DNA of 63,932 bases, the filler included, from Hyphochytrium catenoides (lineage: Eukaryota; Protista; Hyphochytriomycota), in assembly GCA_900088475.1 (NCBI GenBank). It is 10 parts of 10 records of this genome, joined end to end, with 100 filler letters (N's around TTAATTAATTAA, not from the genome) between each part and the next. Parts side by side here need not be neighbours in the genome. Positions count along the whole stretch, not along the records: positions 26,574 to 40,351 come from FLMG01001612.1; 9 more parts are not named here. One strand, written 5' to 3'. Position numbers and translations under genes: made by a program. The notes below the pieces were generated by a model that worked only from the letters and a program-made list of their open reading frames with translations, was not told the DNA's origin and made no database searches. Of the stretch, positions 26,574-40,351 are shown piece after piece. Within the stretch, counting starts at the first letter, position 1. Each line of letters starts with the position of its first letter.

Positions 26574-27265
26574 GAGAAGAGAAAGGGAAGTGAGAGAATA
26601 ATAGAGCAACTTGACTGTAGGCATAAGAACACTGTTGTCACAAGGGTGACTGCGGAATAAACGCCAGTGCAGTGGAGAAAGACTAGTAGTGGTCGATAGA
26701 GTAGCAGAGACAAGTTAGGCCCCGTCCACCGTCCCCCCAACAGCCACGAGGAGGACAGAGAGAGCTGGCCTGTAATGACAGACAGCAAAAGCAGTACTAA
26801 TTCTCAGATAATGAGACATCAAAAAGAAAGGGAAAGTCTAAGACAGTACCTTCGTTTGCTCTCTCTCTCTCTTCTCTTTCTCTCTTTCTCTCTCTCTCTC
26901 TCTCTTTCTTCTCTCTCTCTCTCTCTCTCTTTCTGTCGCACTTGCCTTCCCCCACTTACTCTCTTTCCCTCTCTCTGTTCGTCTTCTCTCTCGCTTACTA
27001 CTTTCCCTTCCTCTCTCTTCTCTTATCCTTCCTTTCTCCTCCTCTTGCTTGCTTGCTCTCTTCTTCCTTAGACCCTTCTCGGGCTCTGTTCCTTCTCTCT
27101 TCTCTCCCTGCCTGCCTTCTCCCACTCTCTCTCTTTCATTATTGAATCTGCCATCAACAAAACGGACCAACAGCAGCAGGGCAGAAGGCCTTTCTGATAC
27201 TTATCATCCTACTAGGAGAGAAAAAGTCTCGGTAGACAGGTCAGGAGGTTCGAGAGGAATATACA

Positions 27266-28030
27266 ATGCACAGTGGCCAGCTTCACAAAAAAGAAGAGCG
27301 AGACACCTCCAAACGTGACATTCTCTTCGCTGCAACCCCGGGATGTGCCGAGGAAGGACAAGAAGTGACTGCCGTGGCTAACTATGGGATAGTTGCCGAC
27401 GAAGAGAACAAGGAGACAAGGAGGAAGTTTGTCTGTGCTCTCGGGGTGAGCAAGAACATCGGAGGCTCTAAAGGGCAAGCTCTTCACATCACAGCGGCTT
27501 GCCTTCTTTCTCTTGCAGCCATTATCTCCCTGAACGGTCTAGGAACAGTCTTTCAAGAACGGAGCCGCGTGCAGATTCTTGTCACTGTTATTCTCTCACT
27601 TGGAGCCAACGCCGGAGTTCTTCTCACCTATCGAACGCTGAAAGCTATGGCAGGAGAACGAGAGAGAGCGTGGGTTGTCGCACTGCTTGCTGCCTTGTCT
27701 GTTTCTCTCTTCGGAGTTGGCTTGGACTTTACGCTTAACAGGACTTTGCCCGTCTGCTCCGGCAATGTAGAGGAAGAGATGAGCGGCAGTGATGGTGGAG
27801 GACGAACAGGAGATGAAGAGGGGGCGAAAGACCTGCCCTGCGCTCAGGATGCAATCGCTAGTGCGCTTACTCTGACCTCTTCAGTCTTAATGGCGGTCAT
27901 TGTCCTTCTGTCTTTTGAGAAAAGGGAGAGAGAAACCATTGAGAAGCCCATCGATCTTCCTGATGGCGCTGACGTGAATGCTGAGACTCTAGCTGTACCA
28001 GTAAGCCTATCGATTGCAGTGAGCGGATGA
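27266..28030 (+). CDS. Hypothetical membrane protein, ~4 TM helices (254 aa)
   Basis: Intronless non-repetitive ORF with four hydrophobic segments (ALHITAACLLSLAAIISL, VQILVTVILSLGANAGVLL, WVVALLAALSVSLFGVGL, AIASALTLTSSVLMAVIVLLSF). Confidence 0.7.
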   Translation: MHSGQLHKKEERDTSKRDILFAATPGCAEEGQEVTAVANYGIVADEENKETRRKFVCALGVSKNIGGSKGQALHITAACLLSLAAIISLNGLGTVFQERSRVQILVTVILSLGANAGVLLTYRTLKAMAGERERAWVVALLAALSVSLFGVGLDFTLNRTLPVCSGNVEEEMSGSDGGGRTGDEEGAKDLPCAQDAIASALTLTSSVLMAVIVLLSFEKRERETIEKPIDLPDGADVNAETLAVPVSLSIAVSG

Positions 28031-28583
28031 GGGGACTGCTATTCCTCTTGCCTCATTCTCCCTACCTCATTTCCATCCGTTCCTCTGCCTTCTCTCCTCT
28101 CCCGGCCGCCCCTAACGGGCGAGGGACACGGAGCACCACATTTTCTCTTTCAGGAGCGCGTTAGGCCCATCATGAGCCAGAGAAGACATAGAGACACCAC
28201 GAGAAGAAAGCTGTAAATACATGGAGATATACATTTTTGCAGCCCACAGTTGCCAAAACAACAGCTTTCCCTCATTACTCAACATGTCTTTGGAGCCAGA
28301 GAGCTCTCTATACTTGCTTGGACGCCAGGTGCTCACCCTATGACTGGCACCTTAGTCGAGCCCTCTTCTCTTTGAAAATTAGAGTGACAGTCGAGAAGGT
28401 CTCTCTCTCTCTTTCTTTATTTAGCATGGTTATTAGGAAGGACATTATTCATTATGTGCGGGTGAGGACAGTCTTCTTCTTGAGCGAAAGAAAAGAGACT
28501 TCTTCTGAACCTCTTCTTCTCCAGCAGCACTTGCCTTCCTCTACTAAGCTTAGTTCTCTCCCTCTGCTACATTGTCTAGCTTC

Positions 28584-29471
28584 CTAATTGCTAGGCTCAT
28601 AGCGATAGAAGCCAAGAGCACCGTCCCATATCTTCTCTTCTGAGACGTTTCTTCCCGTTCTAGGTGCACTGATCATCTTGTTGTTGCCCACATAGATGCC
28701 TACATGGAAGACAGACGCCTCACTTTCACCAAAGAAGACGAGGTCTCCTTCTTTCTCTTGCTTGGCAGTCACCGCTTTCACCTTCTTGATCTGGGTCTTG
28801 GTGCTTCCTCCTCCCAAGACGTCGGAGCCGTAGGTCAAAGAGTAGATCCAACGTGCAAAGCCAGAGCAGTCAAAGCCCACTGTCCTGTCTGCCTCGCACG
28901 GTGTTGGTCCAGAGTAGCCACAGTTGTTACAGCAGCCTAATGTAGGCCCAGGAGAGGCTCCATGGCCTCCCATCCAGCTATAAGGGATGATTCCACCTCC
29001 CCATACGTCCATCTTCTCTCCCTTAGCTGCCTTCCGCGCCCAGCTGGCTGCGTCCCCTTCCGGAGCCACAGTGGGCTTAGGTGGAGCCACAGTGGGCTTA
29101 GGTGTTGCCACAGTGGGCTTAGCCGTTGAAGGCGCTGGAGGCAAGCAGCATTTAAAATAGTCAGGTCCTCTACAGGCCCCAGAGTGCAGCGTCCCAGAGC
29201 ACTGTCCGGGAACCTTGGCAGACTGGCACATTCCTGGCCGGTCATTAGCTGTGCAAGGGACGAAGATGCAGCATTGAAAGTCTGCAGGGCCTGGACAAAA
29301 GCCACTAACACTGCCACCGCCCTTAGCGCTGCACTGCGCAGTGTTCATGCAGGTACCAGAATAGCCGAAAGAGACAGTGCATGATTCTGCGACAGACTCC
29401 ACGCCAAACCAGAGAACGGAGGCAGTGGCTGCCAGAGAGAGAAGAAGAGCTTCTTTTCGGAGCATCATCAT
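28584..29471 (-). CDS. Secreted NlpC/P60 (C40) peptidoglycan endopeptidase with two N-terminal 6-Cys repeats
   Basis: Signal peptide (LRKEALLLSLAATASVLWFGVESVA), two C...C...C...C...CC modules and a KPTVA repeat linker. Catalytic domain motifs IPYSWMGG, GFDCSGF, GDLVFFG, FHVGIYVG, MISAP. No introns. Confidence 0.93.
   Translation of the reverse strand: MMMLRKEALLLSLAATASVLWFGVESVAESCTVSFGYSGTCMNTAQCSAKGGGSVSGFCPGPADFQCCIFVPCTANDRPGMCQSAKVPGQCSGTLHSGACRGPDYFKCCLPPAPSTAKPTVATPKPTVAPPKPTVAPEGDAASWARKAAKGEKMDVWGGGIIPYSWMGGHGASPGPTLGCCNNCGYSGPTPCEADRTVGFDCSGFARWIYSLTYGSDVLGGGSTKTQIKKVKAVTAKQEKEGDLVFFGESEASVFHVGIYVGNNKMISAPRTGRNVSEEKIWDGALGFYRYEPSN
29065..29122. repeat. 21-bp coding minisatellite x~2.8 (KPTVA linker repeat of NlpC/P60)
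   Basis: gccacagtgggcttaggtgga / gccacagtgggcttaggtgtt / gccacagtgggcttag. Confidence 0.9.
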
Positions 29472-30405
29472 CTTTCTTTGATCTTTCGGGTCTTGGTGGT
29501 CGAAGGCTGGTTGGTGGCTGCAGGGAAGTTGGAAAGTGAGAAAGTATCAGAAGGCGCTCCACAAGCTGAATCTCTCAGCCACCCTCCTGACTGCCATGCA
29601 TGCCAAGATGGATCTAGCCTGCCACTGCTCGTTCGTCTTCGAACAGCCATGGAAGAAAAAGGAAGAAGCGAATCCTTTTGGTGGTAGACCGGGAACGAGT
29701 GCAATGTGTGGACGGGTGCTCTGCTCGCCTCTTCTCGAGCTCTTCTCCTTCTTCCTCGTCTCCTTTTGCAGGTGGTGCTATTCCTACATTGTCTGCTGCC
29801 ATGACTTGGGTTCTAGGTGTTGCCTCTTGCTTTTGAACCGCCAACACAACGTACCGTTTCAGAGCCAACATAAAATTCTCTCATACTCTCTGTCTCTTCT
29901 CTCTCTCTTTTCTTCTATCTCTATTCCCTATCTCCTTGTTTGTCCTATCTCTCTTTCCATTGTCTCATTCAGTTCCCTCTCATCTTCAAAAAATACTTCC
30001 GTTTGGCTGAGTGGATTGAGCGGTCTTAGGCACCAGTCCAAAGGGAGTGAGCCGGGATCTTTGCCAGCTTGTCGCGTTTATTCAGATGACAAGGATCTCA
30101 TCCCGACTCTGAAGTGCTTGTCAGTCAACATTGACCTTCTCTTCTCGTCTTCTTCTTTTGGTCAGCTCGCTCCCTAGTGCTTCTCAGTTAGTCGGACCTT
30201 CTTTGACGACTCTGTCTCGAGTCTCCTTCCATTTTCTCTCCCTTTCGCCCAGAATTCAACTCCCTGTCCTTACGTCTCTCACACTCTGACTCTCAAGTCT
30301 ATGTCTCTCCTTTCCTGTGTCTCGTTCTTCTCTCTTTTGTCTTGAACGGAAGTTGACGTCTGCGACCAATAACACTAGTAGACGAGGAACCAGCATGGAA
30401 GGATG

Positions 30406-30645
30406 TCAGCCTGGAGGAGACGAGAGAACGCGGAACGGGGTAGGAAAGGGCACTGTCCAGAACTGCCAAGCAACGCCTCTGTAACCTGAGACAAGCCCTT
30501 GTTGGACGAGACGAGAGAACGCTGAACAGGAGGAACCATCATAAGATAAGCTTCCAACAAGGGTGCCCAGCGTTCTCTCGTCTGGTCCAGGCTGAACAGG
30601 GTAGGAAAGGGTACAGTCCAGAACTGCCAAGCAACGCCTCTGGAA
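30406..30645. repeat. Compound direct + inverted repeat element
   Basis: ~50-bp direct repeat GTAGGAAAGGGYACWGTCCAGAACTGCCAAGCAACGCCTCTG (~30440 and ~30601). GAGACGAGAGAACGC occurs at ~30417 and ~30508, with a reverse-complement copy at ~30568-30595. CCCTTGTTGGA (30496) pairs with TCCAACAAGGG (30553). Confidence 0.8.
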
Positions 30646-31622
30646 GGATCATAAGAGCAATCTTTGATGGTAAAAAGCTAGACAAGGGCAGACCGTCCAG
30701 ATCATCATCTTCGCTTCTTGCCGACATCTGGTCTGTCGGCAAGAGGAGGGAAGAACAGTGCAAGAAGGATGATGGAGGGAAAGAACGGAGAGAAGTGGTA
30801 GGGGAGATAGAGCATCAGGGAAAGGCGTAGGAGAATAGCTAGGAGAAAAACAAAGCGGAAGAAAGATTGACATCAAGAGAGGGACAGACTCACTGCCAAC
30901 GGGTCACAGAGAGACAAAGAGAGACGAGAGAAAGGGAGACAGAGAGAGAGAAAAGAGAAAGAGAGAGAAAGAAGAGAGAGAGAGAGAAAAAAGAAAGACA
31001 CAGAGAGAGAGAGAGAGAGAGAATGAGAGAGAGAGAGAGAGAGAGAGAGATCAGGATCAAAGAGACCATCACTCTGACAAGTGAGCCGTCCAAAAGATAC
31101 TGTACCCTTTCCCGATGTACACGTACAACGCACCTTCCTTCCTCCTAATATTGACAATGGGAGGACACCCTTCTTGCCTGTCTCCGTCACGAACAGCGTT
31201 TCTCCAAAGGTTGTTCTGATCTTCTGATGGTCCTTGCTTGTGAGGAGCTTGATCTTCTGCAATTCATCGGTCTTGGTTCTTCTTGAGGCAACATTTGCTG
31301 CTGCACTGACAAGGTTCAGCATCAAAGGAAAAGGAACACTCTTAGCTGTTGCAGCGTTGCTGCTGCAGGGAATGGTGAAGGATAGTAGACAAAGCAGAGA
31401 TCGGCATAGCTATAGACTAAAGAAGAAGACATATGTCGGACGGGGTCGTAGTGGGGTGATGAATGAGGAAGAGCGGAGGGAGAATGTAAGTAGTAGTATG
31501 AGGGCAGCGCGGTAGATGGGGCCTGCAGGTCACCTCGTAGTTTGCAGGGCAACCCTTTGTATGCGGCCCAGTTCTTCATCAGTCAGTCACGTTTCTCTAT
31601 GACTAGACATCGAGCGGGTAAC

Positions 31623-34318
31623 CTACTGAATAGGCAGCCAGGGCAATTCGTCGCAGAAAGGAGGAGACTTGTGGTGTTCATAGCTTAAGCACGATATTGT
31701 CCTAAAGGAGATGAATGCATGGAAGCAGGCATAAGCTCTTCTTCGTCGCGGCAAGAATAATAAAAGCGTGATGCTCCTTTCTTCTTAGCCCGCTGCCCGC
31801 TCAACATCTGCAACGGGTCTCCCACAATAGGTTTCCGGCATCAGCTCGTCTTCTCATCGTTACATATTCGCCTCTTCTTATAATGCCTAATGACATAAAC
31901 ACCATCATCATCATTAAAGTAACCTATTGAGAGTTGCACTGCTACAAATAGCACCTCTGCTTGTTGCTCCAAACTGGGCGGTCCATCTCCTCTAAGGTGA
32001 CAGTTAACCCTTGGCCAGCGCCCTCGTGATAGGAGATGATTAGGGTTGCGTCTCGCTATGAATCATAACTGTCAAGCTAACCAGGGCTTCGTCTGCTTCT
32101 GGAGGCTTACAGTTAGTCAGATAACGAAGCCATGAGAAAAGCAAAATACCTCTTTGATCCATGGCAATACCTCTAACTACTGGCGTTCACTTCCTCGGGA
32201 CGAGCATGTTGTTGACGGAAAGAGACCAACAGTTCTGTTACTTAGCCTTTATGACGCCAACCGCTGGTGCAATATCATAAATAAGCCTGTCATTTAATAA
32301 ACATATCTATAGAGGTTGCTGGTAGGGCAAAGCGGTCGCAGAGACTCTTATCCTTACACTGAAGACGCGATAGCTCCGGCGACTATACTACCTTCCAACT
32401 CTCGGTTTCCGAAGCCTCATCATCCAACTCTTCAAAAGAAAGACAAGTCTTCGTGATAGTCTTGAGAGAAGCCAAGGCAGATGCGCACATAAGACGGCCT
32501 CTTACTTTAGTGCTAATTCTCTGGTAGTCCAAAGAAGTGTAAGAAGAACTTTTCTCTTAGTAGAAGCATCCCGCCATCTGTCGCTACTCGGCTAACCGAG
32601 CTTGCGTGCTGATAACTGCTGTTCCTGCTGCTACGAAGCAATGTCGACAGCAAGATTCCATGTTCTGTTGCTGAATAAACAGACAACGATCTCACGTTGG
32701 CCAGCTTCGTCATAAGCTGCTATAATCCTTTCTGCTTTGCACAGTTATCACCTTGACATCAGTCCTTGAGAGGCCGTTAAGCAGACCTCGAATGATACTG
32801 CGACAATGTTCTGCATTAGATCTTCATGACGGTGGTTGATGACAAGCGGGTACTTTTAGCGGAGCTGAGTAATGTCCGTCCATGTTGATACCTTCCGTCT
32901 CGGCCTCATGACGAACTTTGGAGGGCTCTGCATAGTTGAATGTAGAAGATAACGTATGGACCTGAAGGAGACAGACGTCAGAGAATCGAGACAGTCGGCC
33001 CGGTCATCATCGTCTCCTAGTCGACAGGAATCTCAGATACTAGGAACAAGAAAGAACCACGGCTAGTTCTCCCTATAGTCCTGAGACCCTTTTTGATAAG
33101 AGTACAACCCCTGCTGTCTCGAGCAAGGATCAGCCTCAGAAGTATACTCTCGACGAGAGCAAGCAAACAAGCTGTCAGTGGCAGTACTATCACGACTAGC
33201 AATGGAAAGCAATCCTCCCCTAAAGGTTCCAGATAGACGGTACGTAGTGCACCACAGCGGTCCTGAATGGCATGGGAGTCTGGAAGGAAGGCAACAAGCT
33301 ACAAGCCCTACTTCACTGCTCACCAGTTCCAACAAACACCGGTAGTCTGCCGCACAGAGTCCGTTACAATCAGATCATCGCAGACGGGTGTCTTTCCACA
33401 GCAGTGTGGCTTTCTGTGTATCTCATGTGCTCTCTCTCTCTCTCTCTCTACCTACCTATCTCTACCTATCTCTTTCTCTTTCTCTCTCTCTCTCTCTCNN
33501 NNNNNNNNCTCTCTCTCTCCTCTCTCTCTCTTTTTATCTACGTCTAATCCTATATTATCTACTATCTGTGGGCGGGAAGCCGCCCATCAGCCAGCAAACT
33601 CAGTGACGGACCCCTGGTAGTAGTTCTATCATCATTTGCAACTGGTTTTTAGTACTCCGTAGAACTACTGATCTAACTAAGGATAAACAGTATTTACACT
33701 GATATGCTAGACCTCATTGACCACGTAACAAGCTACCTACCAAGACTGCTAATGAATATGACTCGTCAGTATAAATGGAAAGGAGGGCAACCACTACTTA
33801 GCTGTACTACGCACTATGCAGATCCATTATTGTCAACTGTTTTACTAAAGTCAAGCACAAGCCTGACGTGGTCAGGCAAGGGGAAGGAACTGAGAATCCA
33901 GGTGGTCGTTGGAAATGGACCGTCCTTTCTTTCTATTGATCAGAGACAGGGAGCAGCAACTTTAGGTTAGTTCGTAGAACTACTAGCCAAGCCATCGCCG
34001 TCGTTCCCACATCACGTTATTATTAGAGAATTAACTGATGGAGGTCTCAACTCACGCGAGTGGTGGTGAAAGAGACAGCACAACTCTAGCCACAGGGATG
34101 ACGTGTCCAAGTAGTAGTAGCTCTCTGGCATGTCGACATTGCTATGACTGATAACAGTAGAGAAGGAAAACGGTAGAAGGACAATTTGAAGCAGATGGGT
34201 CATGATAATTTATGAGAGGTGAACTGTTCGAGCTCAGTTGTCGTTCTACAGGTACCATGTTCTCAGGAGAATCGGTAATCTCCTTCATCGACCAGAAGAG
34301 ACATTCCTTGTTCGGCAT
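31623..34318 (-). CDS. Hypothetical intron-dense gene of short exons
   Basis: Phase-compatible pieces MPNKECLFWSMKEITDSPENM|QCRHARELLLLGHVIPVARVVLSLSPPLA|RKDGPFPTTTWILSSFPLPDH ... ELDDEASETESWK|ICLLNDRLIYDIAPA|LEVLPWIKE|KQTKP.... The middle is not resolved and no family was recognised. Confidence 0.3.
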
Positions 34319-35191
34319 TGCAACGCTTGTGGGCAGCTTGCTACTGTTTCACATTAGACAGAGCAGGAAGAGAGTAGAACTACTTCAGTGAGAAGGAAAA
34401 GGATGCCTAGAGGCCTAGAGTAAGTAAATGATAAGGCATGGAAAAGGATTAGGAGAAAGAAAAGAAGGACTGAGACTGAGTTGCTGGGGATCAGTTGTGA
34501 GAGAAAGAAAAGACGGATTAAGGGAGAAGGAAGCAACAAGTAAGAGAAAGAGAGACAAAGCGAGTGAACGAGACAGAGATGAGATGGTGAGGAGAGCCAG
34601 GGACAGAGGGGAGAACTAGAGAGTGTGAGAAAAGAGAGGAAGAGAGTGATGAGAGTGGATGTTATGATGTAACAACCCATAGCCGTCAAGGCTGGAGGCT
34701 AGTGACACCGTTTCCCTCCTGTCGGATCAGCTCTGAGCACATGAGCTGAGAACAGCGGGATCCGAAGGAAGGGAAAGAATCTATAGAAGTCCAGCACTGA
34801 TAGGAGCATGCTCATCCATAGAAGTTCTGATGCTGCTACCACTGACAATTGAAGAGATATCTCCCTTGCATCTTTCACCCTAGCGTGCCTGTAGCCCTTT
34901 ATGCCTTCAGCGACAACCAAACCATAAACTCTATCCTGTCTTCTCCTCCTCCTCTTATCGATTGATGGGTGCCTATGGCGCAGGAGTAGTCTTCTGGGAT
35001 GCATTTCTTGGTCCCGATAGAAATGGACAACCAAAGAGAGGTCGCTGCCCTTCTTTCAACAATCATCATTCCGCAATTTGCAGTGCCCATCTCAAGATCG
35101 ATCAGCAAGCATTCAGCCAACAGCTAGGCGTCACAAGCACTCCGCAGCGATAGTAAGACAGAGGACGCGAGCCTCACCTTTCACCGTCACC

Positions 35192-36718
35192 ATGACGCAA
35201 AAAAGAAGCTGGTCATCACCGTCACTCCTTTCTTCTATCGTCCAAGCTAGCCTTCTGGCTGCCTTTCTTTGTGGTGGAACGGTCCCAGTAAGGGCTGATG
35301 TTCCTCAACTCAAGGTGTTGCCATCTCTGATCCCAGTTGACGCTAGATGCTCTGACCAGGTTGGCTGCATGGTCAAGGTTGATGGGATGACCTGGAACCT
35401 GCCTGCTATCACCACTTACACGTGGCAGAGCTGCAATGGCTCTACCTGTGTCCTTGCCAAAGGAAACAAGGGAGGAAGCAAAAGCATGTCTCCTTACTAT
35501 ATTCTTGACCACACAGATATAGGGCGGACCATCCAGGTGAAAATCCAGGGACAGTATATCTCGGATCTAAGCAAGGTTCACACGGTCGTCGGATCCTTCG
35601 TGGTAAAGGCGTTTGAGGGGACGAAAGGGCCATATCTTCAGTTTATCAACGGTCTTCCAGATCCTTCCCTCTCATCTAGTACTAGCTCCATCATTGAGTA
35701 CATGGTGACAACCGATAGCGCTGTCTCAGTAAACATCGTGGCAGATGGCGTCGTCCAGCCAGCAAACTTCAAGCAAAAGACGATCAGTGGAAACAACATA
35801 AACAGAATCCAGCTGAAGAACCTCAAGCCTGGGCCACATACCGTCCGGATAAATGCTGTCTCGGCCAACGGATTATCGCAGGAGATCTCTTACTCTTGGA
35901 CCACGCAGGCCGCTCCGGAGCCTCATCCTTGTACTTCCTGCCAGTGGAAACCGAAGGTTTCGGAGACTTGGGATTGGCAGCTGCAGGTTCCTGTCAACAC
36001 CGGTTTCGTCCGTGATGTGTATGATATAGATGGGCTTCTGAATAATAAGCAGGCAGTGAGTGGACTGAAGGCTAAGATGGGCAATGATGGCCTTCCCCGG
36101 CGTGTAATTGGCTACTTTGAGGCGGGCACTCTATCGGTCTGGAGAACGGACGCCGCGCAGTTCCCAGCCAACATCCTCGGCAACCCTTACGATCCTCCTT
36201 ACACTGACGAGCGCTGGATAGACTTCCGCCAGCTCTCTGCAATCCTTCCTTTGATGGAGAAGCGGCTAGATCAGCTGGTGGCGAGCGGCTTTGACGCTGT
36301 GGAGTTTGACAACATTGATGGATGGGATATCCAGCAGTATCGTACTTCTTTCCCTCTTACTTACGAAGATGGCGTAGCCTTCACCGCTGCCCTGGCTAAC
36401 CTCGCAAGATCTAAGGGCCTTCGTGTGTCTCACAAGAACAACTTTGTACAGGTCCAGGATAATCTGCCTTATGTCGACTTCGCCGTCAGCGAGCAGTGCT
36501 TCGAGTACGAGATGTGTGATTACCTCCTTCCCTTTATCAAGGCAGGAAAACCAGTCTTTGCCGTGGAATACAAGCCTTACAATGCCAAGAATAATGTCTG
36601 CAGCAAGGCCCGTGGATATGACATCCGCATGCTGTACAAGCAAACAGCATTGAACTCCTACGGGATCAACTGTGACGCCTCGAAAGCAGGTGGAAAGAGA
36701 AGGATGATGCGTGGATAA
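35192..36718 (+). CDS. Secreted GH114 endo-alpha-1,4-polygalactosaminidase with N-terminal Ig-like domains
   Basis: Signal-like N-terminus from ATG 35192, then beta-rich modules (TYTWQSCNGSTC...YYILDHTDIGRTIQVKI; LKPGPHTVRINAVSANG...SYSWT). GH114 motifs TWDWQL, VYDID, VIGYFEAGT, ERWIDFR, GFDAVEFDNIDG, KNN, FAVSEQCFEYEMC, GKPVFAVEY. Intronless. Confidence 0.93.
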   Translation: MTQKRSWSSPSLLSSIVQASLLAAFLCGGTVPVRADVPQLKVLPSLIPVDARCSDQVGCMVKVDGMTWNLPAITTYTWQSCNGSTCVLAKGNKGGSKSMSPYYILDHTDIGRTIQVKIQGQYISDLSKVHTVVGSFVVKAFEGTKGPYLQFINGLPDPSLSSSTSSIIEYMVTTDSAVSVNIVADGVVQPANFKQKTISGNNINRIQLKNLKPGPHTVRINAVSANGLSQEISYSWTTQAAPEPHPCTSCQWKPKVSETWDWQLQVPVNTGFVRDVYDIDGLLNNKQAVSGLKAKMGNDGLPRRVIGYFEAGTLSVWRTDAAQFPANILGNPYDPPYTDERWIDFRQLSAILPLMEKRLDQLVASGFDAVEFDNIDGWDIQQYRTSFPLTYEDGVAFTAALANLARSKGLRVSHKNNFVQVQDNLPYVDFAVSEQCFEYEMCDYLLPFIKAGKPVFAVEYKPYNAKNNVCSKARGYDIRMLYKQTALNSYGINCDASKAGGKRRMMRG

Positions 36719-37891
36719 GAAAGATGAAGCACCGATTGCCAGCATGCTGAGGCAAATGTGGGAGATTAGGCAGTGTCTATAACTTGTGGCAGAAGGATGA
36801 GCAAGGCCGCTTCGCAAGAGGTGATGAGAAAGAATGGCGAGCGGCTGGAGATGTTGGCGCGACATCTCTCGCCCCCGCTTGTATATTACTTTTTTTGAAA
36901 AACCAGTGAAGGAACGGATGGTAGTTGATAGGAGTTTAACTTACATAACCGGAGTAACAAACTGAATGTCTACTCAGCTCTCCTGCTGGATATAACTCTC
37001 TCATTTCTACTATGATGTCGAGTGAAGGCAGAGAATGAATTTTCTAACATTGAAGGACTCCTCCTTTGCAGTGCAGAGCGACCGAGGGTGGAAGGATGGA
37101 AATGATGGGACCAACCAGGTTAGCAAAAGGACGGTCAAACGACGGGACGAAGAAGAGCAAAGCTGAAGCTAGACCAAGATGTTGCTCGCATAGTACTACT
37201 ACCTGATGCATTGATAGTAGGAGATGGTGGTAAGCAGAATCGCAAGGAAGGATTGAACCAGAGCACTGTTGAACATCTTCGGTGCCTACCCCTATCATAT
37301 CTTTAGCGATGGAAAGTACCCTTGCCTTTCTTCTTCTGAGGATGGAAGCACCCATTCTAGTAGGGCCACTAGTAACCTCAATAGACAGCGGCGCGACAAA
37401 GATTCCGTACCAAAGCGAATTGAAAATTTCTCTTATGCACACGTTAGGGAGTAAGAGTCCACAATCCTGCTTGCCATACTTGTTGCCATCCTCCTCTTTC
37501 TGCTTGTGAACCCACCAACATTATCATCGTTCCATGCTCTCAGTTTCTCTGCTTTCTAGAATCATCAGAGCATGCGCAGCCGCATGATGGCGTTGCAATC
37601 TGGGAGGACAAGGTTGTTACCCTGATTTAGGTCTTCGTTCTAGAAGCAGCTGCAAGCGAGCGACGGCGGGAGAATCAGCATCATCAACACTGATCACGAG
37701 AGCGGGGTCGTTCGTAGAGGCGGCGCTGTCGTTGCTGTCTCTGTGCTGTCCTCTCCGTCCGTCGTCATCACACTCTTCTTCTTTGGTTTCCTACTTGGTG
37801 ACGGATTCTTCCTATTTCGTTTTCTTATCTTCTAGAAGCCCGACAGTACAGGTACCAGGAATGGGACATAAGGAACGAAGGGCAGCTTGCA

Positions 37892-38005
37892 TGATGTCGG
37901 CGTGACGCTGATGACGTCAGGACGCCTGGGATAACCCTAGCTACCTAACGTCATAGCCAGTGGTCACTAGATAATAGCGGGATGGTGCTCTTGGTGCTGA
38001 CGTCA
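37892..38005. promoter_or_regulatory. Cluster of CRE/ATF-like (TGACGTCA) motifs
   Basis: Perfect TGACGTCA at 37912-37919 and 37998-38005, plus half-sites TGACG (~37903) and ACGTCA (~37948). Confidence 0.3.
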
Positions 38006-40351
38006 ACTCCATCAAAAAACAGTAGTAATGATAGTAATAAGTAGAGGACGAACAGAACGCATAGCTCATGGTGGTGCCGTCGAGGGAAGAAGAAGAAGAT
38101 TATTATGTTGACGAGAAGGGAGAAGCCACCCTAACTTCTTGGCCATTTCAGGCCTATTGTGGCGTCCTCCGCCGCTCTTCAGTACATGGCCTTATCTTTT
38201 CCTCATCTTCTTTCCTTGGATGGATTGGTGGATGATGTGCTCCTTGTCGGCTTAGATTACATTGTTGCTTACCTGTTAGCTCCCTTTCAAACTTGGTCAT
38301 TCACCCATCTTGCGGGAACTGCTGCTGCTGCCGCACCGCCATCCATTGAACAACGGCGGATGATGGACATGCTCCCTGCTGCTGCTTCTAGAAGTCTCCA
38401 CGGTCCTACTAAGGGATCTTGCGGCCTGTTGGATGTCCAACCGGACGGGACTCCTTGGCTATTATTCTCACTCTTCCACAGCGCCGCCACTGCGTAGCAG
38501 GCTCCGTGTCTCTCTTGGACACTGTGGCCTTTCTCTCCGTTCTCCCTGCTTTTTCCTTCTTCTCCCTCTTCTGCTGTTATTAGGAGGTTTAGATCCTCAC
38601 CAACTTAACGCCATTTTCTTCCTCTTGTTCTCTGTCTGCGAGGGCTTTCCTCTCTCGCGCTTCTGGTTCTAAATATAATCCATTAAGAAGAGCACTCTGT
38701 CTGTCTCTTGTAATCGGTGAGCTCCTTCCGGTGCCGCTTGCTTCTGTTTCGTGGGAGTCCTGAAAGAATGGCCCAATGTGTGGGGAATATTCCCCATAAA
38801 CATTTCTTTCACTGGAAAGAATACAAGGACGCCAATCATAAACTAGTTGCGACAACTCAATTAAGGTTTGTTTCCAGAAACGTTCCGATTTGACCCTCCT
38901 TGGAAATTAAAGTATTTGGCCAAAGCAGGCCTCCTTTTCTCTCTCCCTTTGTGCCATTGTGACTTTTCTTCTTCTTCTACTCCTTGTACAAAAATGCAGC
39001 AAGAAGAAAGACAGAGTTCGACAGACAGACTGAGGAGAGAGATTTCTCCGTCCTTCAACTCCTTACAACCCCTAGTAAGTAGATAATGTGGTGACCTTAT
39101 TGTGTGAGAGAGAGAGGAAGAAGAGAAGAAAGGCAAAGAAGGAAGATCGAAGACGAAGAAGGAACAACAAGCTGCCTGGTTGTTGGCGGTAATGAGTAAT
39201 AAAGAAGCTCTTGCCATTTGCCTCGAGTTGAATGATGCTGCAAAAAAAGGAAGATGATGATGAGCAAAAGGAGTGGAGTCTGTGGAAGAAGAAAGCGGGT
39301 GACGTTAGGATGACGCGATGCTCCCGTAGTGGTACAAAGGCTTCCACAAATGATGATGAAAACAAAAGCCAGATTGTTGCACCTGCCCTCCTGCTGTTGT
39401 TGGCTTCGATGATAATTCCTTCCTACTTTTATTACTGTATCTCTGCGAAGAAGAAAAGTCCTGCTGCTGTTGTTGGTCCAAACGGACTTTTTGGATCTTT
39501 GTGCAAGCCTCCTCTCACTGCGCCCCATCCACCTAACACAACGTGATGGAAATAAAGTGGCTCCTCCTACTTCTTCGCCCTCTTCTCATCAGTTCCTCCG
39601 TGCTTTCTCCCGTGCTGTCAGCAACAACTAAGAGAAGAGACAGAATTCAAAAATCAAAAATTGAAGAATGGTACATAATAACAGCAGAAGAACAAAAGAA
39701 GAAGTGAACGATTGCATAACCAAAGTTCATGCCAAGGAAGACCCTTACCATTCCCCAAGAAAGCAGCAGGCACTTTGATGATCCTCCCCGTTATCTCCCT
39801 TTTGAAGGAACATTTTCCTTTTTTTCCTTCCTGCTCTTGCTTTGTTCTGGTTCCTGCCGACTATAGCTCTTCTTTCTTCGTGTCTCCTTATCCTCCTATC
39901 CCCGCACTGTTGTCCGCTGTTTGGTTCAGCAATGCACTGACTGACATCTATTTATTATTGATGGTTCGGTTGCGCATATACTCGCCAATCTTTTGGCCTT
40001 CCTCCATTACCAAGGCTGAACTTTCTTCTTGGCCATGTCTGTTGAGGCTTCTCATGATGCCAGCAGTAAAAAGACTTAAGAGATTTGTGTAAGTGTTCCA
40101 AACAGGTCTTTTGTACCTAGGAGCCCCAGTACCTTGAAAAGAGGAAGAGAGATATGGACAGAGAGTGAGACAGAGCGAAGGAGAAAACGGGAAACCAATA
40201 GTGGAAGCAGAAGGAAGAGACAAGGATGGAAGTGGAGGAAGAGTTGAATGAGATGGAAGAAAGACAAGAGATGAAGGCAGTTCCAAGTGAGAGAGAGAGA
40301 ACAAAGAGAGAAAGAGAAGAAAATAAGAGAGAGGAGAGAGAGAGAGAGAGA

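What the first reader, a model, noticed from the sequence alone, without database searches (positions are those of the whole stretch)
28584..36718. Candidate horizontally acquired bacterial-envelope digestion module: NlpC/P60 and GH114 on one scaffold
Seen: two intronless, signal-peptide-bearing hydrolase genes point away from each other ~5.7 kb apart, on a scaffold with host-type microsatellites and no linker between them. Established: NlpC/P60 enzymes cut peptidoglycan stem peptides, and GH114 enzymes (e.g. Aspergillus Ega3) cut alpha-1,4-galactosamine polymers such as GAG and Pel biofilm matrix. Inference: together they could let a protist dissolve biofilm matrix and then cell walls, i.e. 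a clustered bacterivory or antibacterial kit. Both look actinobacterial in style from memory. Intronlessness is only weak HGT evidence, since some other long ORFs here also lack introns.
Basis: partly seen in the sequence, partly recalled or inferred. Interest (0 to 1): 0.8.

Follow-up and report, generated by a model that had tools for sequence, protein, structure and literature searches.

The report
Two bacterial-derived secreted hydrolase genes
A gene-poor stretch of eukaryote-like DNA carries two intact, intronless genes of bacterial ancestry for secreted enzymes, one a bacterial cell-wall peptidase fused to a eukaryotic cysteine-rich module and one a polygalactosamine-cutting glycosidase, but both kinds of acquisition are already described and nothing shows the two work together.

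Summary
An NlpC/P60 gene (28584-29471, minus strand, 295 aa) and a GH114 gene (35192-36718, plus strand, 508 aa) are intact, intronless and divergent. Their start codons lie 5,720 bp apart and both proteins have signal-peptide-like N-termini. The assembly gap (33499-33508) lies inside a (CT)n microsatellite between the genes and breaks no reading frame. Both catalytic cores are intact (NlpC/P60 C202/H256; GH114 D373/E434) and are closest to bacterial sequences.

The NlpC/P60 protein is not a plain bacterial gene. It carries two six-cysteine repeats (CRR/CysRRep), already published as a hallmark of transfer-derived antimicrobial enzymes in eukaryotes. Their closest match is in a green alga.

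The GH114 protein keeps a complete bacterial architecture. It groups, with 100% bootstrap, beside proteins from Terriglobia and Nitrosomonas genome bins, not actinobacteria. A 68%-identical copy on another eukaryote-like contig gives dN/dS of about 0.13, so selection has maintained the gene.

The proposed clustered "kit" is unsupported. The likely donors differ. None of 78 GH114 loci has an NlpC/P60 neighbour. The linkage crosses the gap. The host is unidentified. GH114 substrates include fungal GAG as well as bacterial Pel.

Verdict: two new members of known kinds, of moderate-to-low interest.

The parts
28584..29471 (-). NlpC/P60 (peptidase C40) gene: single exon, 295 aa plus stop codon
   Evidence: ORF. 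Pfam PF00877 E 6.6e-17. PDB sequence hits to CwlO, SagA, RipA and LytE. AF2 catalytic domain pLDDT above 90, with Foldseek top hits RipB and RipA.
29388..29471 (-). Predicted signal peptide, residues 1-28
   Evidence: Charged R5 and K6 followed by a hydrophobic core L9-F22. Inferred; no predictor was run.
29268..29381 (-). Cysteine-rich repeat 1 (CRR/CysRRep), C31-C68, spacing C-9-C-5-C-11-C-7-CC
   Evidence: The spacing fits the published pattern Cx6-9Cx5-7Cx8-11Cx7-8CC. An HMMER search of 1.84 billion representatives gave 287 hits at E <= 1e-3.
29145..29255 (-). Cysteine-rich repeat 2, C73-C109, spacing C-8-C-8-C-8-C-7-CC
   Evidence: The second gap (x8) is one residue over the published 5-7 range, and the same x8 gap occurs in the Enallax costatus protein P0256.
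29062..29122 (-). Pro/Thr-rich linker encoded by a 21-bp tandem repeat (2.9 copies, 95% matches), giving KPTVAxP three times
28587..29051 (-). NlpC/P60 catalytic domain, residues 141-295. C202 and H256 are present, the third triad position is S268, and an extra Cys-rich insertion (GCCxxCGYSGP) is shared with P0347
   Evidence: C202 and H256 are invariant in 49 sequences. Position 268 reads N 28, D 15, H 4, S 2. The shared insertion is seen.
29472..35191 (.). Spacer of 5.7 kb between the two start codons. No family-matching ORF, AG and CT microsatellites, and a 55-nt direct repeat at 30430 and 30591
33430..33530 (.). (CT)n microsatellite holding the assembly gap 33499-33508
35192..36718 (+). 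GH114 endo-alpha-1,4-polygalactosaminidase-family gene: single exon, 508 aa plus stop codon
   Evidence: Pfam PF03537 E 2e-61. Ega3 (6oj1) at E 3.7e-31 by sequence and TM 0.87 by fold. A copy 68% identical in L001.
35192..35293 (+). Predicted signal peptide region, residues 1-34
   Evidence: Hydrophobic core I16-C27 and a VRA motif before D35. pLDDT is below 50 over residues 1-34. This stretch is not conserved with L001.
35309..35911 (+). Two N-terminal beta-sandwich accessory domains, about residues 40-140 and 165-240
   Evidence: AF2 predicts all-beta segments with pLDDT 70-80. The region aligns to P0122 and to bacterial loci L004-L006 and L047-L049 from residue 14-57 onwards. Weak PKD and He_PIG hits occur in relatives.
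35927..36676 (+). GH114 (beta/alpha)8 catalytic domain, residues 246-495, with nucleophile D373 and acid/base E434
   Evidence: pLDDT 90-98. D373 and E434 are invariant in 48 sequences. They align to Ega3 D189 and E247 (residue roles from PMC12054363).

Best explanation
The piece is gene-poor, eukaryote-like DNA. It carries two secreted hydrolase genes of bacterial ancestry that were acquired separately and have been maintained by selection. Gene 1 encodes a signal peptide, two eukaryote-type cysteine-rich repeats (CRR), a Pro/Thr linker and an NlpC/P60 cysteine peptidase of a subfamily whose named members are all actinobacterial. It most likely cuts peptidoglycan stem peptides as a gamma-D-Glu-diamino-acid endopeptidase. 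The CRR pair occupies the place that PG_binding domains hold in the bacterial relatives. It probably acts either as a stabilising pro-domain removed at maturation, as shown for a placozoan lysozyme, or as a targeting module. Gene 2 encodes a signal peptide, two beta-sandwich domains and a GH114 barrel. This complete architecture also exists in Terriglobia and Nitrosomonas genome bins. By family membership it is a retaining endo-alpha-1,4-galactosaminidase acting on polygalactosamine-type polymers (bacterial Pel, fungal GAG). Shown here: the gene structures, domain memberships, catalytic residues, bacterial nearest relatives, purifying selection on GH114, and the absence of the pair in donors. 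Inferred: secretion, substrates, the antibacterial or matrix-degrading role, and that the adjacency is coincidental rather than functional.
For: Domain matches and folds. Catalytic residues. NlpC/P60 catalytic domain: 45-56% identical to bacterial proteins, and every named hit is actinobacterial. Many bacterial relatives carry PG_binding_1 or PG_binding_3 domains N-terminal to it. CRR: the published pattern fits. There are 287 HMMER hits, named ones from Neocallimastix, Onygenales, Entomortierella and Enallax. The partner domains are mostly muralytic: Phage_lysozyme 8, NlpC/P60 6, VanY 6, plus M15, CHAP, M23, YkuD, SpoIID and GH25. P0347 has the same architecture and the same GCCxxCGYSGP insertion. 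The CRR pro-domain role is reported in PMC12855814. GH114: window plus L001 form a clade with 100% bootstrap, sister at 100% to L006, P0122 and L005. L006 carries dnaX, ApbE and a Lon-like gene. Terriglobia and Nitrosomonas bins hold the full-length form. dN/dS against L001 is 0.13 overall and 0.08 in the catalytic part. No GH114 locus has an NlpC/P60 neighbour. Published precedents exist for bacterial GH114 in Bracteacoccaceae green algae and for laterally acquired NlpC/P60 in Trichomonas.
Against: No conserved eukaryotic gene lies on the piece. Its eukaryotic nature therefore rests on low coding density, microsatellites, the CRR module and composition. The NlpC/P60 tree is poorly resolved: support is 48-67% and the window sits near the base of the bacterial clade rather than nested within it. 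The trees contain no fungal or other named eukaryotic GH114 or NlpC/P60 sequences beyond those the searches returned. The third triad residue is Ser, which is rare in the family (2 of 49). The CRR region folded with low confidence. Adjacency of two transfer-derived secreted hydrolases could still be more than chance, and this could not be quantified without the genome.
Confidence: 0.68

Rival explanations
1. One reading: the two genes form a functional, co-regulated cluster (a 'bacterial-envelope digestion kit'). GH114 would strip the Pel-type biofilm matrix and NlpC/P60 would then cut the cell wall, serving bacterivory or antibacterial defence.
For: Both products look secreted and catalytically competent. 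They are the only recognisable genes in 13.8 kb and sit head-to-head. CRR-bearing proteins are mostly antibacterial muralytic enzymes. GH114 enzymes can act on Pel-type polymers according to the literature.
Against: The 5.7 kb between the start codons is long for a shared promoter, and the true distance is unknown because of the gap. The likely donors differ. No donor locus links the two genes. L001 shows no partner within 3.1 kb. GH114 substrates include fungal GAG, so the target need not be bacterial. There are no expression data.
Confidence: 0.12
2. Scaffolding artefact: the two genes come from the same organism or sample but are not physically adjacent. The join at the (CT)n gap would be a mis-join through a common microsatellite.
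For: The gap lies exactly between the two genes, inside a repeat type that occurs at least four times in this piece.
Against: Both edges of the gap carry the same repeat in the same orientation. Tetranucleotide profiles of the two sides correlate at r = 0.85-0.87. Neither point proves adjacency.
Confidence: 0.1
3. Contamination: the piece, or one half of it, is bacterial DNA assembled into a eukaryotic scaffold.
For: The nearest relatives of both catalytic domains are bacterial, and neither gene has introns.
Against: There are two genes in 13.8 kb, long AG/CT microsatellites, and no other ORF with a family match. The NlpC/P60 is fused to CRRs, which the preprint found in 324 eukaryotic species out of 339. 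Best bacterial identity is only 36-56%. Composition is unlike the bacterial contigs. A compositionally similar, equally gene-poor contig (L001) carries the GH114 relative.
Confidence: 0.03
4. Vertical inheritance: both genes belong to old eukaryotic families, and their similarity to bacterial proteins reflects deep ancestry or transfer from eukaryotes to bacteria.
For: The CRR plus NlpC/P60 architecture occurs in fungi, a green alga and uncultured eukaryote-like contigs. The window sits near the base of the bacterial clade, not nested within it.
Against: The catalytic domain is closer to bacterial proteins (50-56%) than to other CRR-bearing proteins (31-45%). GH114 keeps a multi-domain bacterial architecture and nests beside bacterial sequences with 100% support. 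The relevant family and subfamily memberships are overwhelmingly bacterial.
Confidence: 0.07

Closest known systems
CRR/CysRRep-bearing transfer-derived enzymes of eukaryotes: rusticalin of Styela rustica (PMC6339383), the Neocallimastix GH/GL proteins (bioRxiv 10.64898/2026.06.07.730663) and placozoan PLys (PMC12855814)
   Same: A signal peptide is followed by one or more six-cysteine repeats with the same spacing, then a catalytic domain whose nearest relatives are bacterial and act on peptidoglycan. Actinomycetes are the commonest inferred partners.
   Different: The catalytic partner here is a particular NlpC/P60 subfamily (motif GGGHG..PGP) with an extra Cys-rich insertion. The closest repeat pair, 54% identical with the same spacing, is in the green alga Enallax costatus but is fused there to a different NlpC/CHAP subfamily. 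The host here is unknown.
Trichomonas vaginalis NlpC/P60 peptidoglycan hydrolases (PDB 6biq, 6bim, 8ev4; PMC6299479, PMC10461829)
   Same: A eukaryote holds laterally acquired NlpC/P60 enzymes aimed at bacteria, with the same fold and a Cys-His core.
   Different: Sequence similarity is only distant (E 8e-4 to 1e-2). The accessory domains and the likely donor group differ.
Mycobacterial RipA/RipB and Bacillus CwlO/LytE D,L-endopeptidases
   Same: These are the best structural and PDB sequence matches to the catalytic domain, and the catalytic Cys and His are in place.
   Different: Those are bacterial autolysins with bacterial regulatory or binding domains. Here the third triad residue is Ser, and the N-terminal module is a eukaryotic CRR pair.
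GH114 endo-alpha-1,4-polygalactosaminidases: Aspergillus fumigatus Ega3 (6oj1) and Fusarium solani FsGH114 (9ep6)
   Same: The (beta/alpha)8 barrel matches with TM 0.87, and the nucleophile Asp and acid/base Glu are conserved.
   Different: Identity to Ega3 is only about 30%. The window protein has two extra N-terminal beta-sandwich domains and is closer to bacterial sequences (36-43%).
Bacteria-derived GH114 (EAG) reported as specific to Bracteacoccaceae green algae (PMC11811186)
   Same: A GH114 gene of bacterial origin sits in a eukaryotic (chlorophyte) genome.
   Different: Whether the window or L001 belongs to that lineage could not be tested. Those genomes have 54% G+C, against about 47-49% in the non-coding part of this piece.

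Membership tests
NlpC/P60 (Pfam PF00877, peptidase C40) | Profile match above the curated cut-off | tested here: met
   61.8 bits against a cut-off of 23, E 6.6e-17.
NlpC/P60 (Pfam PF00877, peptidase C40) | Papain-like alpha+beta fold | tested here: met
   AF2 pLDDT is above 90 over residues 141-295. Foldseek top hits are RipB, RipA, MAP1204 and SagA, probability 1.00.
NlpC/P60 (Pfam PF00877, peptidase C40) | Catalytic Cys (DCSGF motif) and His | tested here: met
   C202 and H256 are invariant in a 49-sequence alignment.
NlpC/P60 (Pfam PF00877, peptidase C40) | Third polar triad residue (His, Asn, Asp, Glu or Gln) | tested here: inconclusive
   The window has S268. The column reads N 28, D 15, H 4, S 2. 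Ser is polar but rare here.
NlpC/P60 (Pfam PF00877, peptidase C40) | Cleavage of peptidoglycan stem peptides | not testable with these tools
   Inferred from family membership and from the muralytic partners of CRR modules.
Cysteine-rich repeat (CRR/CysRRep) proteins | Spacing Cx6-9Cx5-7Cx8-11Cx7-8CC | tested here: met
   Repeat 1 has spacing 9-5-11-7, which fits. Repeat 2 has 8-8-8-7, one residue over the range in the second gap.
Cysteine-rich repeat (CRR/CysRRep) proteins | Sequence homology to known CRR proteins | tested here: met
   287 hits at E <= 1e-3, including the cluster of Neocallimastix californiae ORY74019.1 at E 1e-40.
Cysteine-rich repeat (CRR/CysRRep) proteins | N-terminal position after a signal peptide, followed by a prokaryote-like domain | tested here: met
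GH114 (Pfam PF03537) | Profile match above the curated cut-off | tested here: met
   207.6 bits against a cut-off of 27, covering profile positions 1-227 of 231.
GH114 (Pfam PF03537) | (beta/alpha)8 barrel like Ega3 | tested here: met
   Foldseek hit to 6oj1 at E 2.3e-20, TM (target) 0.87.
GH114 (Pfam PF03537) | Nucleophile Asp and acid/base Glu (Ega3 D189 and E247) | tested here: met
   D373 and E434 align to them and are invariant in 48 sequences.
GH114 (Pfam PF03537) | Endo-alpha-1,4-galactosaminidase activity and the actual substrate (Pel, GAG or other) | not testable with these tools
   Family inference only.
Prokaryote-to-eukaryote horizontal transfer | Nearest relatives are prokaryotic and the gene groups with them in a tree | tested here: met
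   GH114 groups at 100% bootstrap with bacterial full-length proteins. For NlpC/P60 the best hits are bacterial but tree support is weak, 48-67%.
Prokaryote-to-eukaryote horizontal transfer | The gene sits on genuine eukaryotic DNA | tested here: inconclusive
   Evidence in favour: low gene density, microsatellites, the CRR fusion and composition unlike bacteria. No conserved eukaryotic gene lies on the piece.
Prokaryote-to-eukaryote horizontal transfer | Patchy distribution among related eukaryotes | not testable with these tools
   The host is unidentified and the window proteins are not in the protein collection.
Functional gene cluster or co-transferred module | The same pair is linked in donors | tested here: not met
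   None of 78 GH114 loci (0.85 Mb) holds an NlpC/P60 or CRR gene. The one bacterial NlpC/P60 locus examined has no GH114.
Functional gene cluster or co-transferred module | Linkage conserved in related eukaryotes | tested here: inconclusive
   L001 has no NlpC/P60, but it holds only 3.1 kb upstream of the gene against 5.7 kb in the window.
Functional gene cluster or co-transferred module | Co-expression | not testable with these tools
   No expression data.

The most novel reading that the evidence does not exclude
The adjacency is real and conserved. An unidentified eukaryote, possibly a green alga, would then keep a small island of independently captured bacterial hydrolases that are expressed together to strip polygalactosamine-type biofilm matrix and lyse the bacteria beneath it. 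The CRR pair would act as a reusable eukaryotic cassette that is grafted onto each newly captured muralytic domain in place of its bacterial wall-binding domains.
Probability: 0.1. Interest if true: 0.6.

Novelty: new member of a known kind. Interest (0 to 1): 0.33.

Why it matters
The finding adds one more clean case of a eukaryote retaining bacterial hydrolases under selection. One gene is an example of the CRR-plus-muralytic-enzyme chimera. In it, the bacterial PG_binding domains appear to have been replaced by a eukaryotic cysteine-rich pair. The other gene was taken over with its full bacterial domain set. The contrast between the two is useful for thinking about how transferred genes are domesticated. 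It does not open a new question. Transfer of NlpC/P60 (Trichomonas, mites, fungi), the CRR hallmark, and bacterial GH114 in green algae are all published. The one new claim, a two-enzyme kit, has no support beyond proximity on a gapped scaffold.

Tried and rejected
1. The word-index protein search with the N-terminal 27-112 region found nothing. The exhaustive HMMER search then resolved it.
2. Exact look-ups showed that the three window ORF products are not in the collection, so no source organism was obtained.
3. The two further cluster look-ups named fungi and one alga among the CRR relatives, but no organism for P0347, P0121 or P0122.
4. A paper search for the run accession of L001 found nothing. 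No supplementary files are held for the Bracteacoccus paper.
5. Pfam scans of 76 other open frames (36 of at least 70 aa and 40 of 45-69 aa) gave no credible hit. There were no tRNA or Rfam hits. The flanks therefore gave no host marker.
6. AF2 on the full NlpC/P60 protein left the CRR region below pLDDT 50, because the alignment had no depth there. No fold comparison of the CRR was possible.
7. The synteny test with L001 was inconclusive because the contig is too short.
8. The repeat search found only AG/CT low-complexity repeats and one 55-nt local duplication, with no LTRs or transposon ends around either gene.
9. A check of the 3' flanks for poly(A) signals gave an AATAAA about 165 nt after the NlpC/P60 stop and no clear chlorophyte TGTAA signal. 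This was not used as evidence.
10. The cysteine pattern resembles that of beta-defensins. This is recalled from memory only and was not tested.
11. The idea that the piece is bacterial contamination was considered and rejected.

Full report
**1. What is there**

In the piece 26574-40351 only two open frames carry recognisable protein families. The piece has about 49% G+C, AG/CT microsatellites, and no tRNA or Rfam hit.

- ORF 28584-29471 on the minus strand (295 aa) matches NlpC/P60 at E 6.6e-17.
- ORF 35192-36718 on the plus strand (508 aa from the first ATG) matches GH114 at E 2e-61.

Another 76 open frames of 45 aa or more gave no credible Pfam hit. Nothing else in the piece resembles any of the 409 proteins fetched up to that point.

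The genes are head-to-head, with 5,720 bp between the start codons. Both proteins begin with a short charged stretch and a hydrophobic core typical of signal peptides. This is an inference, because no signal-peptide predictor was available. Each gene reads from ATG to stop and aligns to homologues along the whole domain, so no intron is needed.

**2. The assembly gap**

The gap 33499-33508 lies inside a (CT)n microsatellite that continues on both sides in the same orientation. It is 4.0 kb from the NlpC/P60 start codon and 1.7 kb from the GH114 start codon. It interrupts no gene. The ORFs listed across it are translations of the CT repeat.

The linkage of the two genes does depend on this join. 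Tetranucleotide profiles of the two sides correlate at r = 0.85-0.87, and this holds with the genes removed. They correlate at 0.66-0.83 with the relative contig L001 and at about 0 with bacterial or phage contigs. Both halves therefore look like one kind of genome, but adjacency is not proven.

**3. The NlpC/P60 protein**

Domain order:

- signal peptide, residues 1-28
- two six-cysteine repeats, C31-C68 and C73-C109
- a Pro/Thr linker encoded by a 21-bp tandem repeat
- the catalytic domain, residues about 141-295

*Catalytic domain.* It is 45-56% identical to bacterial proteins. All named hits are actinobacterial: Streptacidiphilus, Streptomyces, Nonomuraea and Actinomadura. Many of them carry PG_binding_1 or PG_binding_3 domains N-terminal to the catalytic domain. 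One relative, P0007, combines NlpC/P60 with SLT and sits beside a TraG/VirB4-like ATPase, which suggests a conjugative-element wall hydrolase. C202 and H256 are invariant across 49 sequences. The third triad position is S268, where the family has N, D or H and rarely S. The AF2 model is confident for this domain. Its best structural matches are the mycobacterial D,L-endopeptidases RipB and RipA.

*N-terminal repeats.* They found nothing in the word search, which justified the exhaustive search. That search gave 287 representatives at E <= 1e-3. The repeats fit the published CysRRep pattern Cx6-9Cx5-7Cx8-11Cx7-8CC. The second gap of repeat 2 is one residue over the range.

Published work describes these repeats as follows:

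- They are found mainly in eukaryotes.
- They usually lie at the N-terminus.
- They are followed by domains most similar to bacterial proteins, chiefly from actinomycetes, or to phage proteins.

In a placozoan lysozyme the repeat domain stabilises the pro-enzyme and is cut off at maturation.

Among 107 of my hits, the partner domains are dominated by peptidoglycan enzymes: Phage_lysozyme 8, NlpC/P60 6, VanY 6, plus M15, CHAP, M23, YkuD, SpoIID, GH25 and muramidase. Named sources are the fungi Neocallimastix, Onygenales and Entomortierella, and the green alga Enallax costatus.

*Closest relatives.* The Enallax protein P0256 has the closest repeat pair. It is 54% identical over 85 aa and has the same cysteine spacing, including the unusual x8 gap. 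Its catalytic domain belongs to a different NlpC/CHAP subfamily. The metagenomic protein P0347 has the same overall architecture and a catalytic domain 45% identical. It also shares a Cys-rich insertion (GCCxxCGYSGP) that the bacterial relatives I read lack. The window protein therefore belongs to an existing eukaryote-type family, not a fresh one-off capture.

*Tree.* A neighbour-joining tree puts the window near the base of the bacterial clade with weak support, 48-67%. Bacterial ancestry is well supported by similarity. The donor and the timing are not resolved.

**4. The GH114 protein**

Domain order:

- signal peptide
- two beta-sandwich domains, about residues 40-140 and 165-240, pLDDT 70-80
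- a (beta/alpha)8 barrel, residues 246-495, pLDDT 90-98

The barrel matches Aspergillus Ega3 at E 3.7e-31 by sequence and TM 0.87 by fold. The experimentally verified Ega3 nucleophile D189 and acid/base E247 align to D373 and E434. Both are invariant in 48 sequences.

The closest relative is a 502-aa ORF on L001, a Logan contig of 5.6 kb with 48% G+C and no other family-matching gene. It is 68% identical over residues 56-507. Synonymous sites between the two are saturated. dN/dS is 0.13 overall and 0.08 in the barrel. Both the accessory and the catalytic parts have therefore been under long purifying selection.

The next relatives cover nearly the full length, from residue 14-57 to residue 494, at 36-38% identity. 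They lie on bacterial DNA. L006 carries dnaX, ApbE and a Lon-like gene. The genome-bin matches are two Terriglobia/Terriglobales bins and one Nitrosomonas bin. In a neighbour-joining tree, window plus L001 form a clade at 100%, and that clade is sister at 100% to L006, P0122 and L005. The gene was thus taken over with its complete bacterial architecture. Its nearest known bacterial kin are not actinobacteria. A bacteria-derived GH114 has already been reported in Bracteacoccaceae green algae.

**5. Is it a cluster?**

- The two genes point to different donor groups.
- None of 78 GH114-bearing loci has an NlpC/P60 or CRR gene nearby. The 84 fetched loci scanned total 0.85 Mb with flanks of up to 10 kb.
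- The bacterial NlpC/P60 locus examined has no GH114.
- L001 shows no NlpC/P60, but it extends only 3.1 kb upstream, so that test is inconclusive.
- The 5.7 kb spacer has no detectable gene or mobile element. It is long for a shared promoter.
- GH114 enzymes act on polygalactosamine stretches found in fungal GAG as well as bacterial Pel. The "bacterial envelope" reading of that gene is only one option.
- The host is unknown. The best lead points to a chlorophyte alga, from the Enallax repeat pair and the Bracteacoccus precedent. For such a host, defence or management of surface-associated microbes is more apt than bacterivory.

**6. Verdict**

The kit hypothesis is unsupported.

Both genes are new members of known kinds. 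One is a CRR-fused muralytic enzyme and the other is a bacterial-derived eukaryotic GH114. Interest is moderate to low.

Noticed in passing
window 27266-28030 (+), with the CT microsatellite 26859-26934 upstream: A 254-aa ORF with about four hydrophobic segments and no credible family match (DUF1129 at E 0.003, below the cut-off). It may be a lineage-specific membrane protein gene, or it may be non-coding.
   Followed up: partly
window 29062-29122: The Pro/Thr linker of the NlpC/P60 protein is encoded by a near-perfect 21-bp tandem repeat (2.9 copies, 95% matches). This suggests recent expansion of the linker.
   Followed up: partly
window 30430-30484 and 30591-30645: A 55-nt direct repeat, 91% identical and 161 bp apart, lies in the spacer between the two genes. 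Its meaning is unknown.
   Followed up: no
L002 8001-9101 and L003 3051-4151: A GH114 protein with a weak He_PIG domain (P0241, in the P0166 cluster) lies on phage-like contigs beside a DNA polymerase A gene, a UvrD-type helicase gene and many small ORFs. Phages therefore carry GH114 enzymes, perhaps as matrix depolymerases.
   Followed up: partly
L044 3310-10990: A bacterial NlpC/P60+SLT protein (P0007), 56% identical to the window's catalytic domain, sits downstream of a TraG/VirB4-like ATPase. This subfamily therefore includes wall hydrolases of conjugative elements, which are mobile potential donors.
   Followed up: partly
Proteins P0243-P0392, scanned: The cysteine-rich repeat is partnered overwhelmingly with peptidoglycan-active domains: GH24, GH25, NlpC/P60, CHAP, VanY, M15, M23, YkuD and SpoIID. 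A few partners are other secreted enzymes: ribonuclease, papain-type protease and phospholipase A2.
   Followed up: partly
window 28584-29471 compared with P0256 (Enallax costatus): The repeat pair is more conserved between the two proteins (54%) than their catalytic domains (about 31%, and of different subfamilies). This suggests the repeat pair is reused as a cassette with different captured enzymes.
   Followed up: partly
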